Shown here: positions 15,686 to 21,171 of the stretch, piece after piece
Numbering within the stretch: position 1 is the first letter of the stretch
Layout: each line of letters opens with the position of its first letter
Assembly: GCA_004431415.1 (NCBI GenBank)
Contig: QPMI01000560.1
Span: 1-64,000, forward strand
Length of the DNA: 64,000 nt
From: Cyanophora paradoxa CCMP329
Lineage: Eukaryota > Plantae > Glaucophyta
Direction: 5' to 3'
The notes under the pieces: model-generated
Databases searched by the model: none
Told to the model about the DNA's origin: nothing
The model's input: only the letters and a program-made list of their open reading frames with translations
Position numbers and translations under genes: made by a program

Positions 15686-16960
15686 TCATCGCTTGGCCTC
15701 GTAGCGCCGGATCTCCCACGTCTCGCCTGCGGGCGGGGCCCCGGGCGCGATGAGCGGGGCCGGGGCGCTGGCGGCGGGGCGGGAGGGGACCGCGCGGGAG
15801 GCGACGCGGTGGGCGGAGGCGAGGGCGAAGGCGTCGTCGATGGCGGCGCGGGGCACAAAGGCGAGCGCCGGGTCCACCACCTGCGCGCCGTCGGCCCCGG
15901 CCGGCGGGGCGGGGCGGGCGGGGCGGGCGTCGGGGGCGATGGCGGGGGCGTGGTAGACGGAGAGGAGGAGGGTGTCGACGGCGCGCGCCGCGTGGAGCTC
16001 CCGCGACGTCGACGGGCCCGCCTCCACCGACACCGCCCCGCACCCCGCCTGCCCGTCGAGATCGGGCCCCGCCCCCGCCCGGGGGCGGGGCGCGGGGGCG
16101 CACGGCGCGGAGGTAGGCGACGGCGGCGGCGATGGAGGGCCGCTCCGCGCCGACCACGCGCACGTGCCGCAGCTCCCGCTCCGCCGCCGCCGCCTGTCCC
16201 CGTCAGCGGCGGCCTGGCGCGGCGCGGGCGGGCGCGGCGGGCACCTCGAGGCGGGGCGCGGCGGCGGCGGGGCAGAAGAGGACAGGGACGATGGGCCGGT
16301 CGGAGGCGGCGGTGAACATCGCGTGCGAGAGGAGACCCGCCGGGTCCTGTGCCCGCGTCAGGGCCGGGGGGCGGGCCGGGGCGGGGGTAGGGGGCGCCTG
16401 GCCGCGGGTGAGGACAAGGACGAGCTGGGGGCCGGTCTTGCCGAGGGTCCGCACGCGCCAGTCCAGCAGGCCCTCCGCCGCCGGGCCCGCCAGCGCGTAC
16501 CGCAGCCGCGGCTCCTCCCTGGGGCGTCCGTGAGGGCTGTGGCGGGCGGCAGACCTCGAACTGAGGGCGGCGCACCGGAGGTTCTTGCCGCTGGTGACGA
16601 TGCCGTCGGCGAAGGCCCGCACGTAGTTCAGCACGAAGAAGTCTGCCGGGGGGGGGTCTGGGTGGGCAGCGGCGGGGGCGCTGCGGGTCGGGGCGGGCAC
16701 CGTGGTCGGAGCGCGGCGTCCGCTCGCACTGCCGCAGCGTCACGTACTCCGAGCCGTAGGGCCGCCCGTCCGTCCCGGGGTTGACCTGAGAAAGAAGAGG
16801 GCCGCTTGCCTCAGAGCGGTGCATACATGCGGGCGGGGCGGCGGGGCGGGGCGGGCGCCTGCCAGACGGCGCTGACGTGGATGATGCCGGGGCGGAGGGG
16901 CCGGCCCCCGAGCAGCGCCGCCGCGAGCCGCGTCACCTGCGATCGAGGGCCGCGTCAGAG

Positions 16961-16993
<33 letters not shown>

Positions 16994-19602
16994 GAGAGAG
17001 CGCGCGGACGTCGTCGGAGGAGGAGAGGACGGGGAGGAAGTCGGCGTCCGCGGGGAGGCCGCGGCCCGCCCCGCCCCGCCCCCGCCGGCGCCTCCAGCCG
17101 CGGCATCAGCGCCTCCGCCTGCGCGCGCGCGGCCCTCAGCGCGCGTGCGCCTGGCTGGCTGGGCGGGCGCGCGTTCTGGGCCTGAATGTGCCGCAGGGCC
17201 GAGGAGCTCTGCTGCTCCTGCGCCCCCGCGCTGCGCTCCCCGGGCGGGAGCCCGCCGCTAGAGCCGAGCTGCGAGCGCAGAGGCGGAGGTCAAGGGTGCT
17301 GGGCGAAGCGGTGAGGGGCGGGGCGGGGCGGGGCGGACGGCGACGTGGGCGAGGGCGGGGGGCAGGATGGCGGAGCGGAAGAAGAGGTAGGAGCCGGCGC
17401 GGCGCGCCGCCAGCGGCACCACGCTCGGCGTCGCCCCGAACTGCAGCAGGAGGAGGTCAGGGGCGAGACGTCAGCAAGGAGCCGAGGGCGCTGGGGCGGG
17501 CCTGGAAGGCGGCGCCCTCGACGAGAGAGGGGCGGGGGGAGCCGGCGGCCGCGTGGGCCCCCACCACCACCGGGCACCGCCTGCCCGCGCCACGCTCGGG
17601 CGGGGCACGCGGGGGCGGGGCCGGGGCGGGGCGGACGTGAGGAACTCCTCGGCGGGGATGCCGGAGCGGAGGAGGGAGCCGTAGACCTGCGGGCCCCCCT
17701 CGCACAGCACCGTCGCCGCCTGCCCACAGCAGACTCAGGTGAGCGGGGCCGAGCTGGCGCGGCGGGGCGGGGCGGGGCGGGGCGGGGCGGGGCGGGGCGG
17801 ACGCCGTAGTCGGCGTGGAGGATGCGGGCGAGCTGGCGCCAGTCGGCGCTCTCCTCCCCCAGCTCCAGCACCTCCATCGGCCTGCGCGGAGCAGGCGGGG
17901 CGATCGGTCCGGGGAGGCAGGGAGGGACGCGGGGGCGGCGCCGGCGAGCGGACCCGGAGCGGGTGTCGTAGAAGCGGGAGGAGCGGAGGCGCTCGGCGCC
18001 GCGGCGCGTCGTGGCGACGACGACGTGGACGTCTGGCGGGGCGGGGCGAGGGGAGGCTTGGAGGGAGCTCGAGCTCCGAGGGGCTGCGGGGGCGCCCAAC
18101 GGACCGTCGCGGCGGAGGACGGAGGCGTCCCTGGGGATGTCCCCCTCGGCGGACATGAAGACGTGGAGGGGCACGGGCCGGCGCCCCTCCTCCGCCCGCA
18201 GCGCCTTGAACTCCCCATCGTCGTCCGGGAAGATGTGCTCCGGCACCTGCGCGGGGCGCCCGGCTCGGCGCGGCTAGGCTTTGGAGGCCCAAGGCTTCCG
18301 GCGGGCGGGCACCAGCATGTGCTCGGGGTGCGCCCGGAGCGTGCCGTCCCCGATCACGATGGCGTCGGCGCGGGCGCGGAGGGCGGCCATCAGCCAGCGG
18401 TCGTGGACGGAGGAGTTGGTGATGTGGTGCCCGCCCGGCGGGTTGACGAAGGAGATGCGCCCGTCGTGCGCCGCCGCGAAGTTGACGTAGACGTAGGGGC
18501 CGGTGGCGGGGTCGGCGGGGACGCGCCAGTCGCCGTCGTAGAGGCGGCGCATGGCGGGGGGCAGGGAGAGGAAGCGGGTGGCGCCGTAGTCGGGGAGGAG
18601 GCCGCGGGCGGCGGCCGGCGGGGCGGGGCCCGCCGTGTCGTCGAAGAGGGCGGAGAAGGCGCGGCGGCCCTCCGCGAAGAGCGCGTTGCACTCGCGCTGC
18701 AGCACGCCGCCCACGACGGCCGCCTGCGGGAGGCCCCCGCGCGCCTGCGCCGCCACCGCGTCGGCGGCGATGTCGATCTGGTCCCACCCGACCAGCCGCA
18801 GGTACGGGATCGACGTCCCGAAGACCACCAGGCGGATGCCCGCCCACATGATCGCCGCCATGCTGCCCGCTGCGTCAGGCCGGCCGGCGCCGCGAGGACG
18901 GGGCGCCGGCGGGGGGAAGGTTGGGGGGCGCGCCACATGGGGCAGGGCTCGGCGGTGGTGTAGAGGGCGAGGTCGGACCAGTCTACGCCAGGGTACTTGG
19001 CGGCGCAGGCGCGGATGGCGGCGACCTCGCCGTGGAGCGTCGGGTCGGCGCGCGAGTTGTTGACGCCCTCGACGAGCACCTCACCCGTGCTGCGGCGCAC
19101 GACCACCGCCCCGAACGGCGCCTTCGGGTTCCTCTGCCCAACTTCGATCGCCAGCCGCATGTACTTCTCGTGCACCTCCCGCGCTGCGCCCCCCGCCGCG
19201 GCCGCCGCCCCGCGTCAGAACCCCGCTGTCAGCGCAACGGCGCCGCAGGGGCCGGCGTATGCAGGGGTTTCTGGCGGCGCTAAATGATCTAAGGGCATTG
19301 CCGACGCCTGTGCGGCTCGCGCCACGCGGGCGGGCTGACCGGCCGCGTACGTAACGACGGCCGCGGGCGGAGCACGAACCAGAGTGGCTTGGCGCGGCTC
19401 GTGGAATGACCTCAGCCGACCTTGCATTCATGCTGCGGACGCCGGGTTGCAGATGCGGGACCGGCGGCCGCGTGCAGGCGCCCGAAACCGAACCCGGCGG
19501 CAGGGGACCGCGCCCTGTCGCATGTGTGACGTACGTCGCACGTACGGCCGCGCCGAGGGCTCTGATGGCCGCCGAGCGCCGCCTAAGCGAGGCCGACAAC
19601 AT
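15686..19602 (-). CDS. Fusion of Zn-dependent nucleoside/nucleobase deaminase + RibD_C/DHFR-like reductase + second divergent RibD_C-like domain; possible organellar presequence
   Basis: Deaminase: YMRLAI..PFGAVVV..DPTLHGEVAAI..YTTAEPCPMCMAAIMWAG..GGVLQRECNALF. Domain 2: PYVYVNFAAAHDGRI..DRWLMAALRARADAIVIGDGTLR..LCEGGPQVYGSLL..EEFLT. Domain 3: IIHVSAVW..DFFVLNYVRAFADGIVTSGKNLREEP..VSVEAGPSTS..VDTLLLSVY. Start may be 19602 (MLSASLRRRSAAIRAL) or 19298. Confidence 0.8.
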
Positions 19603-19643
19603 GGCGGGGGGAAGAAGGACTGGCCGGGTATGCTGAATTCGAA

Positions 19644-21171
19644 ATGGCGGCGGAAGAGGAGCACACAGAGCCGTCGGCGAGCTCCTCTGGAGACGGAGTC
19701 GCTAGCATGTCGGGCTTCATGACCGTTTCCGAGGCGTACGATCGGGCCCACTCGCTCATGAAGGCCATCGACGGCAGCGGGCCGCCGGACCCGGCGGCGC
19801 GCGCCAAGCGCCTGGAGGCCGCCATCCGCGCGTTCATTGACGTCGAAGTGATGATCGACCGCGCTGCGCTTTTCTCGCGCAACGAGACGATGGACGATGT
19901 GCAGACGAACTGCATCAAGTGCGCGCCTCCGCCGCCGCTCGTAATCGCGCCGCAGTTAGCCTTGGCCGCTGCTGATTAGAAGCCGCCAGGTTTCTGCTCG
20001 TGCCCGCTATCCTGGCCGAGCTGGCGCTCAAGAACAACGACCGCGTCCGGCGAGTGAAGACGCTGGAGCGCGCCAAGGTGCGACTCTGTCGCGCGGTACG
20101 ATGCAGCTCTATGGCGCCGACCGTGCCGGCGCGCAGGCGCTGTACAGGCGCTTCCTCGCTCACTGCGACGAGCTCGGCATTCTGGAAGAGGCGGTGCGGC
20201 TGCGGCGGCCGCGCCGCGGGTGGCGGGGCGCGGCCTCACGGGGCTGGGGCGCGGTTGCAGGACAGGAAAGCGTTCAGGCGGGAGACGGAGGGGGACGCGA
20301 GCGGGGTGCGGGAGGAGAAGATCGAGCGGTTCAAGCGGGACCGCGTCGCCCAGCAGAAGCTTGCCGTGCGCCCCCCCGCCCGCCCCCTGCCCGCCGCCCG
20401 GCCGGCCCAGCGAGCCGCAAGAGGCGCACGCGAGCCGAGCCGGGCGGCGCGCAGGAGCTGGCGAGGAGGAAGGGGGCGCGGGCGGCGGAGGGGGCGGAGG
20501 GCCCGGACGAGGAGCTGGAGCGGGAGCTGTGGACGATGCTGGTGCAGTCGGCGTGCCGCAAGGCGCTGGACGAGACGCGCCTCATCGAGCAGGAGCGGAC
20601 GATGCTCGTCGAGATGGAGAAGCTCGACCCCGAGCGCTTCAGGGCGAGCCTCTCCATGGCCCCCGGCGCCGCCTACAACGAGCAGCTCCGCCGCGACGAG
20701 GCCAGCAGCAGCAGCAGCGGCGGCGCGGGGAGCAGCAGCCGCGGGGGCGGGCGGGGACAGCGCCCGATCCACATCACGGACGCGGCGGGGGCGGCGGCGG
20801 CGGCGGCGGCGATGAACGCGGTGATGAACCGGCGGGAGGAGATCCGGCGGGGCGTGATCGTGCAGGAGCGGCAGTACCTCTTCCCCGACGAGGTCCCCAT
20901 GGAGACCCTCCTCCGCGGCGGCCGGTCCGCCGCCGCCCGCCCGCCCCCGCACCCCCGCCCGCCCGCCCGCGAGGGACGCCGCGCCGTGCCGGGGGGCGCT
21001 GAGGCTCCGCCCCCCCGCAGCGTGCTCTCGGGGGGCACGGAGCCGAAGAAGGCGGAGGAGGAGGAGGACAGCGACCGGGAGGAGGTGTCGGACCGGAAGA
21101 CCCTCAAGGCCCGCAACTGGGACGACTGGAAGGACGAGAACCCGCGCGGCGCCGGCAACACCATCCGATAG
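19644..21171 (+). CDS. TAP42: PP2A regulatory subunit TAP42/TAP46/alpha4 (IGBP1)
   Basis: LFSRNETMDDVQT..IK|FLLVPAILAEL, REEKIERFKR, KARNWDDWKDENPRGAGN. Confidence 0.93.

What the first reader, a model, noticed from the sequence alone, without database searches (positions are those of the whole stretch)
15686..19602. Three-domain enzyme: nucleobase deaminase fused to two different RibD_C-like reductases
Seen: one apparently continuous spliced frame joins an HGE/PCxxC deaminase, a RibD_C-like domain (NF..DG, LRARADAIVIG.GTLR, EGGP) and a second, very divergent one (DFFVLN..RAFADGIVTSGKNLREEP, EAGPST). The domain 2-3 linker splices in phase (ALAHVA|LGSSGG) with no intergenic-looking DNA. Known: true RibD has one deaminase (PC-x8-9-C, NP.VG motif) and one reductase. 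This deaminase instead has the PFGA/PCPMC form of guanine-deaminase/TadA-like enzymes. Inference: this is not riboflavin RibD but a multi-step purine/pyrimidine salvage, catabolic or metabolite-repair enzyme, probably built from bacterial genes and possibly organelle-targeted (MLSASLRRRSAAIRAL). The fusion would functionally link two orphan reductase families. Best candidate for an undescribed system in this window.
Basis: partly seen in the sequence, partly recalled or inferred. Interest (0 to 1): 0.8.

Follow-up and report, generated by a model that had tools for sequence, protein, structure and literature searches.

The report
Deaminase fused to two RibD-like reductases
A real, transcribed gene of the alga Cyanophora paradoxa joins a guanine/cytosine-deaminase-type zinc deaminase to two different bacterial-type RibD_C (DHFR-fold) reductase domains in one reading frame, a layout found nowhere else in the protein collections searched and split in the published annotation; what it does has not been tested.

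Summary
On the minus strand, 19602-15686, lies one gene of about 19 exons. Spliced cDNA contigs from three studies join the exons in one frame. A DNA run of the same organism shows none of these joints.

The product is about 826 aa:
- a 74-aa Arg-rich presequence;
- a zinc deaminase (HGE, PCPMC; Pfam PF00383, E 5e-15);
- a complete member of a bacterial ~290-aa RibD_C subfamily ('A', closest solved structure M. tuberculosis Rv2671);
- a short linker;
- a member of a second bacterial ~264-aa RibD_C-like subfamily ('B').

Exons 10-14 hold no ATG, so domain 3 can only be made as part of the fusion. The organism is Cyanophora paradoxa. Its published annotation models only domain 3 (263 aa).

It is not a canonical RibD. 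No fused relative appeared among 1.84 billion representative proteins.

Bacterial family-A genes recurrently sit beside CodA-like deaminases, creatininase-family hydrolases, FAD oxidases and ABC transporters. That favours a deaminate-then-reduce pathway for an aminopyrimidine-type heterocycle. The substrate is unknown.

Verdict: a new variant of a known kind and a useful fusion lead. Interest is moderate.

The parts
19380..19602 (-). Exon 1: ATG at 19602 and a 74-aa presequence. It is Arg-rich, has no acidic residue before about position 63, and has no Phe.
   Evidence: cDNA contigs reach 19610 (X1) and 19600 (X2). The 19183/19380 joint is GT..AG. Translation.
18934..19183 (-). Exon 2: N-terminal half of the zinc deaminase (PFGA, HGE, PCPM). 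It ends with TG of the second Cys codon and has a GC donor.
   Evidence: PF00383 E 4.6e-15. PDB guanine deaminase 1wkq E 3e-10. Joint 18862/18934 in three runs.
18313..18862 (-). Exon 3: completes PCPMC and the C-terminal half of the deaminase (to about 18658), a linker of about 22 aa, then the start of RibD_C family-A domain 2 (from about 18591).
   Evidence: the deaminase hits and the RibD_C hits fall on separate parts of this exon. A1 profile positions 16-108, 120.6 bits.
18105..18246 (-). Exon 4, domain 2.
   Evidence: A1 profile 111-155, 45.2 bits. Joint.
17954..18032 (-). Exon 5, domain 2.
   Evidence: A1 profile 158-175. Joints 18032/18105 and 17880/17953.
17803..17881 (-). Exon 6, domain 2.
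   Evidence: A1 profile 182-206. Contig-length arithmetic.
17637..17719 (-). Exon 7, domain 2, with the CEGGP motif.
   Evidence: A1 profile 209-233, 28.1 bits.
17502..17580 (-). Exon 8, domain 2. GC donor.
   Evidence: A1 profile 236-258. Joint 17440/17502.
17339..17440 (-). Exon 9: end of domain 2 (..YLFFRSAIL), then ..ALAHVA.
   Evidence: A1 profile 261-286.
17170..17268 (-). Exon 10: linker (LGSSGG..QAQNA), 33 codons, no ATG. In this assembly the boundary of intron 10 is non-canonical (CG..AG or GC..CA).
   Evidence: Joint 16936/17170 in X1 and X2. Phase 0 on both sides. No ATG.
16859..16936 (-). Exon 11: start of family-B domain 3 (GIIHVSAVW, matching the bacterial GVIHPTAVW).
   Evidence: Bacteria-only family-B profile positions 9-35. 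Alignment. This exon is missing from the published model P0154.
16701..16785 (-). Exon 12, domain 3.
16576..16642 (-). Exon 13, domain 3 (FFVLNYVRAFADGIVTSGKNL).
   Evidence: Profile 57-77, 18 bits. Joints.
16398..16518 (-). Exon 14, domain 3 (REEPRLRY..). GC donor.
   Evidence: Profile 79-120, 30.6 bits.
16245..16346 (-). Exon 15, domain 3. It holds the first ATG downstream of exon 9.
16104..16193 (-). Exon 16, domain 3.
15929..16048 (-). Exon 17a, domain 3 (VEAGPSTS, VDTLLLSVY).
   Evidence: Profile 178-219, 37.4 bits. Pfam RibD_C on P0154, E 7.7e-5.
15791..15880 (-). Exon 17b, domain 3. The 48-nt GC..AG intron before it (15928-15881) is in frame and rests on the published model and the bacterial alignment.
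   Evidence: P0154 sequence. Alignment. Not seen directly in the listed joints.
15686..15726 (-). Exon 18: ..GETWEIRRYEAKR and the stop codon. It is in frame only with the extra C that the cDNA carries near 15796.
   Evidence: Joint 15727/15796 with 5 letters between, in X1, X2 and X15. C-terminus of P0154.

Best explanation
This is one nuclear gene of Cyanophora paradoxa. It encodes a polypeptide of about 826 aa built from three modules that occur as separate proteins in bacteria.

Modules:
1. A CDA-fold zinc deaminase of the guanine/guanosine/cytosine-deaminase type, with the catalytic HxE and PCxxC motifs intact.
2. A complete 'family A' RibD_C reductase, Rv2671-like, with all family-invariant residues and the EGGP motif.
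3. A 'family B' RibD_C-like domain, with all 14 family-invariant residues.
These follow an Arg-rich presequence, probably mitochondrial.

Shown: the fusion, its transcription, the domain identities, and that it is not an orthologue of RibD.

Inferred: the protein carries out consecutive steps on one small N-heterocycle. These would be hydrolytic removal of an exocyclic amino group from an aminopyrimidine-type ring (cytosine-, guanine- or pterin-like, or a ribosylaminopyrimidine) and NADPH-dependent reduction by the DHFR-fold domain(s). The two reductase-fold domains probably pack against each other as an internal pseudo-dimer, as RibD/Rib7 reductases do as homodimers (recalled, not checked here). 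The pathway is more likely salvage or catabolism than riboflavin synthesis.
For: Single spliced transcript and frame: joints, contig lengths; phases; no ATG in E10-E14.

Deaminase.

Domain 2: profile 16-286 of 289; all 8 invariant columns of A1 present; A1 against Rv2671, E 3e-30.

Domain 3:
- 7.7e-5 to Pfam RibD_C.
- hhalign probability 95-96%.
- Bacterial homologues at 35-42% identity and 80 bacterial loci.
- The A1 HMM hits those ORFs at 1e-12 to 1e-20.
- Invariant columns of A3 include the Cyanophora rows.
- The model of a bacterial family-B member (P0157) has pLDDT 95 and matches Rv2671, Rib7 and RibD reductase domains.

Not RibD: TIGR00326 scores 16 bits against 156, on single exons only, and the zinc motif is PCPMC.

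Deaminase-reductase partnership: in 80 metagenome loci, family A sits beside CodA-like amidohydrolase deaminases in 14 loci, FAD_binding_4 in 11, creatininase in 9 and ABC transporter genes in 13-14. An unrelated deaminase fold is thus paired with the same reductase family.

No fused relative.
Against: - No biochemical or genetic data exist for this protein or for either bacterial subfamily.
- The operon evidence concerns an amidohydrolase-fold deaminase, not the CDA fold. No CDA-type deaminase lies within 8-10 kb of family A or family B genes in 160 bacterial loci.
- Families A and B are never neighbours there.
- The pseudo-dimer idea is untested. The joined protein could not be folded and no complex job was possible.
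- Targeting is read by eye.
- Contigs cannot exclude minor isoforms that end after domain 2.
- As given, the window has a 1-nt difference that would shift the last 14 codons.
Confidence: 0.6

Rival explanations
1. It is Cyanophora's working RibD equivalent. A non-orthologous deaminase and an Rv2671/Rib7-like reductase would carry out the deamination and ribosyl reduction steps of riboflavin synthesis, with domain 3 as a dimer partner.
For: - The overall layout (deaminase followed by RibD_C) is that of RibD.
- The profile of relatives matches archaeal and fungal-type pyrimidine reductases and RibD reductase domains.
- The RibD substrate carries the same 2-amino-4-oxopyrimidine ring as guanine (established chemistry).
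- An earlier scan note reports that this genome encodes a GTP cyclohydrolase II fusion (s1-515194), so the pathway is present.
Against: - The deaminase has PCPMC and lacks the RibD-type motifs. TIGR00326, TIGR00227 and TIGR01508 all score far below their cut-offs, though only single exons were scored.
- The bacterial family-A relatives examined lie in transporter/CodA-like/creatininase clusters. No riboflavin genes were among the recurrent neighbours.
- Rv2671, the closest characterised relative, is reported not to be the riboflavin enzyme (PMC12855090).
- I could not check whether Cyanophora has a canonical RibD/PyrD/PyrR elsewhere.
Confidence: 0.15
2. It is a pterin/folate enzyme. The DHFR-fold domains would reduce a dihydropterin or dihydrofolate-like ring, and the guanine-deaminase-like domain would deaminate the 2-amino-4-oxo pterin ring (pterin to lumazine), for example in pterin turnover.
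For: - The top structural and sequence relative is Rv2671, crystallised with dihydropteridine and tetrahydrofolate rings and reported to reduce dihydrofolate (PMC10530724, PMC12855090).
- GTP cyclohydrolase I lies 0.3-2.7 kb upstream of family-B genes in 24 of 58 bacterial loci with enough flank.
- An earlier scan note reports another RibD-like reductase beside GTP cyclohydrolase I and two PCD genes in this genome (s1-512851; not checked here).
Against: - Of the FolE-linked loci that are in the tree, nearly all fall in one tight Polyangiales clade. A cholesterol-oxidase-like gene and an opposite-strand ORF lie in between, so this may be inherited gene order rather than an operon.
- Family-A contexts show no folate or pterin genes among the recurrent neighbours.
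- The DHFR activity of Rv2671 is described as that of a functional analogue, not as its proven native role.
Confidence: 0.15
3. These are two genes, as in the published annotation: a deaminase-reductase gene and a separate domain-3 gene. The cDNA contig would then be an assembly chimera of overlapping transcripts.
For: - The published model P0154 covers only domain 3.
- C. paradoxa genes are densely packed, with overlapping UTRs (PMC6704402).
- Logan contigs cannot prove a single molecule.
- The boundary of intron 10 is non-canonical.
Against: - The link is a spliced, in-phase junction (E10|E11), seen in two studies and absent from the DNA run.
- E9|E10 fits the exact contig length.
- E10-E14 hold no ATG.
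- P0154 starts inside intron 11 and lacks the conserved GVIHPTAVW exon that all bacterial relatives have.
- The authors themselves say the models need manual curation.
Confidence: 0.05

Closest known systems
Bifunctional RibD (E. coli RibD, B. subtilis RibG; TIGR00326)
   Same: A zinc deaminase of the CDA fold is followed by a RibD_C (DHFR-fold) NADPH reductase in one chain. The reductase fold is matched by profile and by structure.
   Different: - The deaminase is of the PCxxC guanine/cytosine/TadA type, not the RibD type.
- The reductase belongs to a different subfamily of about 290 aa.
- A third domain, a second RibD_C-like domain, is appended.
- The RibD family scores are far below cut-off, though only single exons were scored.
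- Bacterial relatives do not show riboflavin neighbours.
[quoted passage not shown]
   Same: It is the closest solved relative of domain 2's family (E 3e-30) and the top structural match of the family-B model. It is a stand-alone RibD_C protein outside the riboflavin pathway (PMC12855090).
   Different: - Rv2671 has 258 aa and a single domain.
- The bacterial family-A relatives scanned score 54-82 bits on the PRK14059 models, against cut-offs of 184-274, so family A is a sister group, not a member.
- Rv2671 has no deaminase attached.
CDA-fold base deaminases: B. subtilis guanine deaminase (1wkq), plant guanosine deaminase (7dbf), yeast cytosine deaminase (1uaq)
   Same: They are the best solved relatives of the deaminase half encoded by exon 2 (E 3e-10 to 2e-6). 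They share the HxE and PCxxC zinc site and the domain size of about 150 aa.
   Different: - Similarity is modest (31-43 bits), so the substrate cannot be read off.
- Here the domain is fused to reductases, whereas those enzymes are stand-alone.
- The closest relatives are an unfused Cyanophora paralogue (P0025, 55-62% identity) and bacterial 'nucleoside deaminases'.
Plant PyrD/PyrR (RibD homologues with one inactive half each)
   Same: They are eukaryotic, organelle-targeted deaminase-reductase fusions descended from bacterial genes (recalled from the literature, not tested here).
   Different: Those are true RibD homologues. This protein is assembled from other subfamilies and carries two reductase-fold domains.

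Membership tests
RibD, bifunctional riboflavin deaminase/reductase (TIGR00326, PRK10786) | RibD-type deaminase domain, with the zinc cysteines spaced as PC-x8-C and an NPxVG loop. | tested here: not met
   The sequence shows PFGA and PCPMC. TIGR00326 scores 16.5 bits (E2) and 15.8 bits (E3) against a cut-off of 156. Single exons cannot reach a whole-protein cut-off. The motif spacing of RibD is recalled knowledge.
RibD, bifunctional riboflavin deaminase/reductase (TIGR00326, PRK10786) | C-terminal RibD_C reductase domain. | tested here: met
   Exon-wise profile match 16-286 of 289. Relatives hit PF01872 at 45-72 bits. The profile hits RibD chains 2b3z and 2g6v.
RibD, bifunctional riboflavin deaminase/reductase (TIGR00326, PRK10786) | A role in riboflavin synthesis (complementation, rib operon context). 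| not testable with these tools
   The recurrent neighbours of bacterial relatives are CodA-like deaminases, creatininase, an FAD oxidase and ABC transporter genes, not rib genes.
CMP/dCMP-type zinc deaminase (Pfam PF00383) | Score above the gathering cut-off, with H-x-E and PC-x-x-C present. | tested here: met
   55.8 bits against a cut-off of 25. HGE lies in E2. PCPM|C is completed across the cDNA-supported E2|E3 splice.
Guanine deaminase of the CDA fold (B. subtilis GuaD) | Substrate-binding residues, including the swapped C-terminal Tyr. | not tested
   It is only the best PDB hit, at 43 bits over the N-terminal half. Specificity residues were not mapped.
RibD_C (Pfam PF01872), domain 2 | Pfam gathering score. 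| tested here: inconclusive
Exon 3 alone holds only the first 56 profile positions and scores 16.6 bits against 24.1. Its family members pass.
Rv2671-like 'pyrimidine reductase family protein' (NCBIfam PRK14059 models) | Score above the equivalog cut-off. | tested here: not met
   The family-A relatives scanned reach 54-82 bits against cut-offs of 184-274. They are related (A1 against 4xrb, E 3e-30) but form a separate subfamily.
Bacterial family A (~290-aa RibD_C proteins, alignment A1) | Full-length collinear match and the 8 invariant columns (L24, N50, F51, G57, D79, R87, P239, G243 of P0005). | tested here: met
   All eight residues are present in E3 and E8. The exon scores sum to about 239 bits.
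Bacterial family B (~264-aa RibD_C-like proteins, alignments A2/A3) | Collinear match to a bacteria-only profile, and the 14 invariant columns. | tested here: met
   (E11-E17, positions 9-219; the C-terminal WxxxR is seen). The invariant columns of A3 include the rows P0154 and P0155, which carry the window's residues.

The most novel reading that the evidence does not exclude
The fusion is a Rosetta stone for an undescribed pathway. On this reading, family A and family B RibD_C proteins and an aminopyrimidine deaminase act one after another on a single heterocycle, for example deamination followed by NADPH reduction of a cytosine-, isocytosine-, pterin- or ribosylaminopyrimidine-type compound. 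Bacteria would encode this route as the transporter/CodA-like/creatininase/FAD-oxidase operon, and Cyanophora would have condensed it into one organelle-targeted protein.
Probability: 0.2. Interest if true: 0.75.

Novelty: new variant of a known kind. Interest (0 to 1): 0.5.

Why it matters
- RibD_C/DHFR-fold proteins outside riboflavin synthesis are numerous and almost all uncharacterised. Gene fusions are among the most reliable computational hints that proteins act together.
- This fusion ties together two such subfamilies. One is widespread in bacteria and sits in a conserved operon. The other is centred on Myxococcota, Gemmatimonadota and Acidobacteriota. Both are tied here to a base deaminase. 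That gives a short, testable list of substrates.
- It corrects the published C. paradoxa annotation, which models only the last third of the gene.
- It adds an intron-rich example of bacterial-type modules assembled into a new multidomain enzyme in a glaucophyte.

Tried and rejected
1. All searches used single exons by reference, the read-through ORF 16203-16700, the partial published models (P0154, P0155) or bacterial relatives. For the same reason no complex or pseudo-dimer prediction was run: domain 2 has no single reference.
2. AlphaFold on P0155 alone gave pLDDT 37 and was unusable. P0155 also looks mis-modelled, with two deletions.
3. Exact look-ups of P0154 and P0155 found no contig. 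The paralogue's locus, and any fused upstream part it may have, could not be examined.
4. I looked for a bacterial operon that mirrors the fusion. No CDA-type deaminase and no A-B adjacency occurs in 80 + 80 loci. Three loci have a different second RibD_C paralogue upstream of family A.
5. The GTP cyclohydrolase I link of family B rests almost entirely on one Polyangiales clade, judging from the linked loci that are in the tree. I kept it as a lead only.
6. The quick tree of family B leaves the Cyanophora pair on a long, unplaced branch. No donor can be named. The careful search did not finish.
7. The Atlas search with exon 3 was uninformative, scoring 0.78.
8. The Rv2671 primary paper (PMC6201685) is not held. 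Its claims are cited through two secondary papers.
Full report
**What is there**

The region is very GC-rich: 66-80% in 2-kb bins. It reads as an intron-rich eukaryotic gene on the minus strand. I placed the exons by reading the sequence, computed their phases exon by exon, and checked them against public sequencing runs.

Runs X1, X2 and X15 come from three studies. They hold contigs that skip exactly the predicted introns, with GT..AG or GC..AG ends on the minus strand. Run X13 lies collinear with the genome, introns included, and shows none of these joints. So the joined forms are cDNA.

One X1 contig of 2061 nt starts at 19610 and ends 16 nt into exon 15. The sum of 8 nt of leader, exons 1-14 and those 16 nt is exactly 2061. 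An X2 contig of 2051 nt starts 10 nt later. The E10|E11 joint (16936/17170) is listed for both runs. Shorter contigs link E15 to the 3' end.

**The fusion is real**

- E9|E10 and E10|E11 are both phase 0.
- Exons 10 to 14 hold no ATG in any frame. The first ATG downstream of exon 9 is in exon 15.
- Exon 11 encodes the conserved GVIHPTAVW-type strand that every bacterial relative of domain 3 has.
- Domain 3 can therefore only be translated as a continuation of the upstream frame.
- If intron 9 were retained, it would shift the frame to a nearby stop. I saw no evidence of such an isoform, but contigs cannot exclude one.

**Organism and annotation**

A word search with the read-through ORF 16203-16700 found two EukProt proteins with Cyanophora paradoxa-style identifiers:
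- P0154 (tig00021126_g18484.t1, 263 aa) maps onto this locus.
- P0155 (g18469, 266 aa) is a paralogue.

The published genome paper describes 67.6% GC, 9.2 introns per gene with a mean length of 86 bp, dense packing, and models that 'will require additional manual curation' (PMC6704402). All of this fits the window. Earlier notes of this scan also name the organism.

P0154 covers only domain 3. It starts at an ATG inside intron 11, lacks exon 11 and retains intron 14. A search of 1.84 billion representatives with exon 3 gave no hit below E 1e-30. So the deaminase-reductase part seems absent from the protein collections.

**Domains**

1. Exon 1 gives a 74-aa Arg-rich presequence. It has no acidic residue until about position 63 and no Phe. 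From recalled knowledge of Cyanophora plastid transit peptides, which carry an N-terminal Phe, I read it as more likely mitochondrial. This is inference.

2. Exons 2-3 encode a zinc deaminase.
   - PF00383 scores E 4.6e-15.
   - HGE and PCPMC are intact. The second Cys codon is split by intron 2.
   - The best solved relatives are B. subtilis guanine deaminase, plant guanosine deaminase and yeast cytosine deaminase.
   - TadA and RibD models score far below cut-off on single exons.
   - The closest relatives are an unfused Cyanophora paralogue (P0025, 182 aa) and bacterial 'nucleoside deaminases'.

3. Exons 3-9 encode domain 2. The exon-3 search returned stand-alone bacterial RibD_C proteins of about 290 aa at about 50% identity.
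   - A profile of 20 of them (A1) is matched by exons 3-9 in order over positions 16-286 of 289. All eight invariant columns and the CEGGP motif are present.
   - That profile hits M. tuberculosis Rv2671 at E 3e-30, then archaeal Rib7-type reductases and RibD reductase domains.
   - Rv2671 is reported to be a dihydrofolate-reductase analogue rather than a riboflavin enzyme (PMC12855090, PMC10530724).

4. Exons 11-18 encode domain 3.
   - Pfam sees RibD_C at E 7.7e-5, just under its cut-off.
   - hhalign against A1 gives probability 95-96%.
   - P0155 finds bacterial proteins of about 264 aa at 35-42% identity.
   - A scan of species genomes found the family in 80 species, mostly Myxococcota, Gemmatimonadota and Acidobacteriota.
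   - The A1 HMM hits those ORFs at 1e-12 to 1e-20.
   - A bacteria-only profile is matched by exons 11-17 in order.
   - All 14 invariant columns are kept.
   - A model of a bacterial member has pLDDT 95 and matches Rv2671, Rib7 and RibD reductase domains at TM 0.58-0.70.
   - The EAGP motif is a feature of the whole family, not decay.

Domains 2 and 3 are each much closer to their own bacterial family than to each other. They share about 20% identity with each other. So this is not a recent internal duplication.

**Is the layout known?**

- No hit spans both halves of exon 3, and the longest hit is 411 aa.
- A word search that admitted proteins of 226-719 aa gave 42 relatives, all with RibD_C alone.
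- In 160 bacterial loci there is no CDA-type deaminase next to family A or family B, and no A-B adjacency.
- Three loci have a different RibD_C paralogue upstream of family A.

Within the limits of these searches, the three-domain layout is unique to this locus.

**Function**

Family A has a recurrent neighbourhood. Among 80 metagenome loci, about 45-48 of which have more than 1.5 kb of flank on a given side:
- amidohydrolases occur in 14;
- ABC transporter genes in 13-14;
- an FAD_binding_4 oxidase, nearly always just downstream, in 11;
- a creatininase-family hydrolase in 9.

The amidohydrolases tested score as the CodA-like cytosine-deaminase subfamily, at 281-311 bits, which is under the cut-off. 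So in bacteria the same reductase family keeps company with an aminopyrimidine deaminase of an unrelated fold. In Cyanophora it is fused to a CDA-fold one. This is the best support for a deaminate-and-reduce pair acting in uptake-linked salvage or catabolism, rather than in riboflavin synthesis.

For family B, GTP cyclohydrolase I lies upstream in 24 of 58 loci. Of the linked loci that are in the tree, nearly all fall in one tight Polyangiales clade. Unrelated genes lie in between.

A riboflavin role is not excluded. I could not test whether the genome has a canonical RibD.

**Limits**

- Everything rests on exon-wise references, partial published models and relatives.
- The pseudo-dimer idea, the targeting and the substrate are inferences.

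**Verdict**

This is a new domain arrangement of known folds, with moderate interest as a functional lead and as an annotation correction.

Noticed in passing
window 15791-15800 (minus strand ..GCCTCCCGCGCG|GT..): cDNA contigs of three studies and the published model P0154 carry one more C here than the window (CCCC against CCC). With the 64-nt intron 15790-15727 spliced, the window as given would shift the last 14 codons. Either the assembly has a homopolymer error or the strains differ.
   Followed up: partly
window 16937-17169 (intron 10), with a G run of about 38 at 16964-17003 on the + strand: The cDNA joint gives CG..AG (or GC..CA) boundaries in this assembly, although a perfect GC-donor consensus starts one base earlier. 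The tool reports no ambiguity, while my reading allows a shift of one base. This could be another 1-nt assembly difference or a truly non-canonical intron.
   Followed up: partly
window 15686-19602, all introns: Five or six of the 18 introns use GC donors (after E2, E8, E11, E14 and E17a, perhaps E10). Introns are 47-233 nt long, and several are built of GGGGC/GCCCC repeats.
   Followed up: no
window 19602-19644: A TAP42-like gene lies head to head on the + strand (PF04177). The two start codons are 41 bp apart, and only about 36 nt (19611-19646) are left uncovered by cDNA contigs. That makes an extremely short bidirectional promoter region.
   Followed up: partly
P0155 (tig00021126_g18469.t1), not in the window: This paralogue of domain 3 has a C-terminal two thirds identical to the window's protein, while its N-terminal third is only about 40-68% identical. 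That suggests a recent partial duplication or gene conversion. Its locus could not be fetched, so I do not know whether it too is fused.
   Followed up: partly
Read-laying table 5c: joints 15783/18543 (X1, X2 and the DNA run X13) and 16271/18365 (X1, X2): Some contigs join distant points of this gene with 25-39 foreign letters in between. One of these joints is also in the DNA run. They probably come from another locus that shares GC-rich stretches. Not explained.
   Followed up: no
L001 787-11690; L095 49-3180; L097: A conserved bacterial cluster: ABC transporter, NIF3-like gene, NMT1-type binding protein, family-A RibD_C reductase, FAD_binding_4 oxidase, creatininase-family hydrolase, and one or two CodA-like amidohydrolases. 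No function is assigned to it.
   Followed up: partly
L048 4185-10744 and 23 other loci: In a Polyangiales clade the gene order is alpha/beta hydrolase, FAD_binding_2 protein, GTP cyclohydrolase I, cholesterol-oxidase-like GMC oxidoreductase, a conserved 225-aa ORF on the other strand with no family match, then the family-B RibD_C-like gene.
   Followed up: partly
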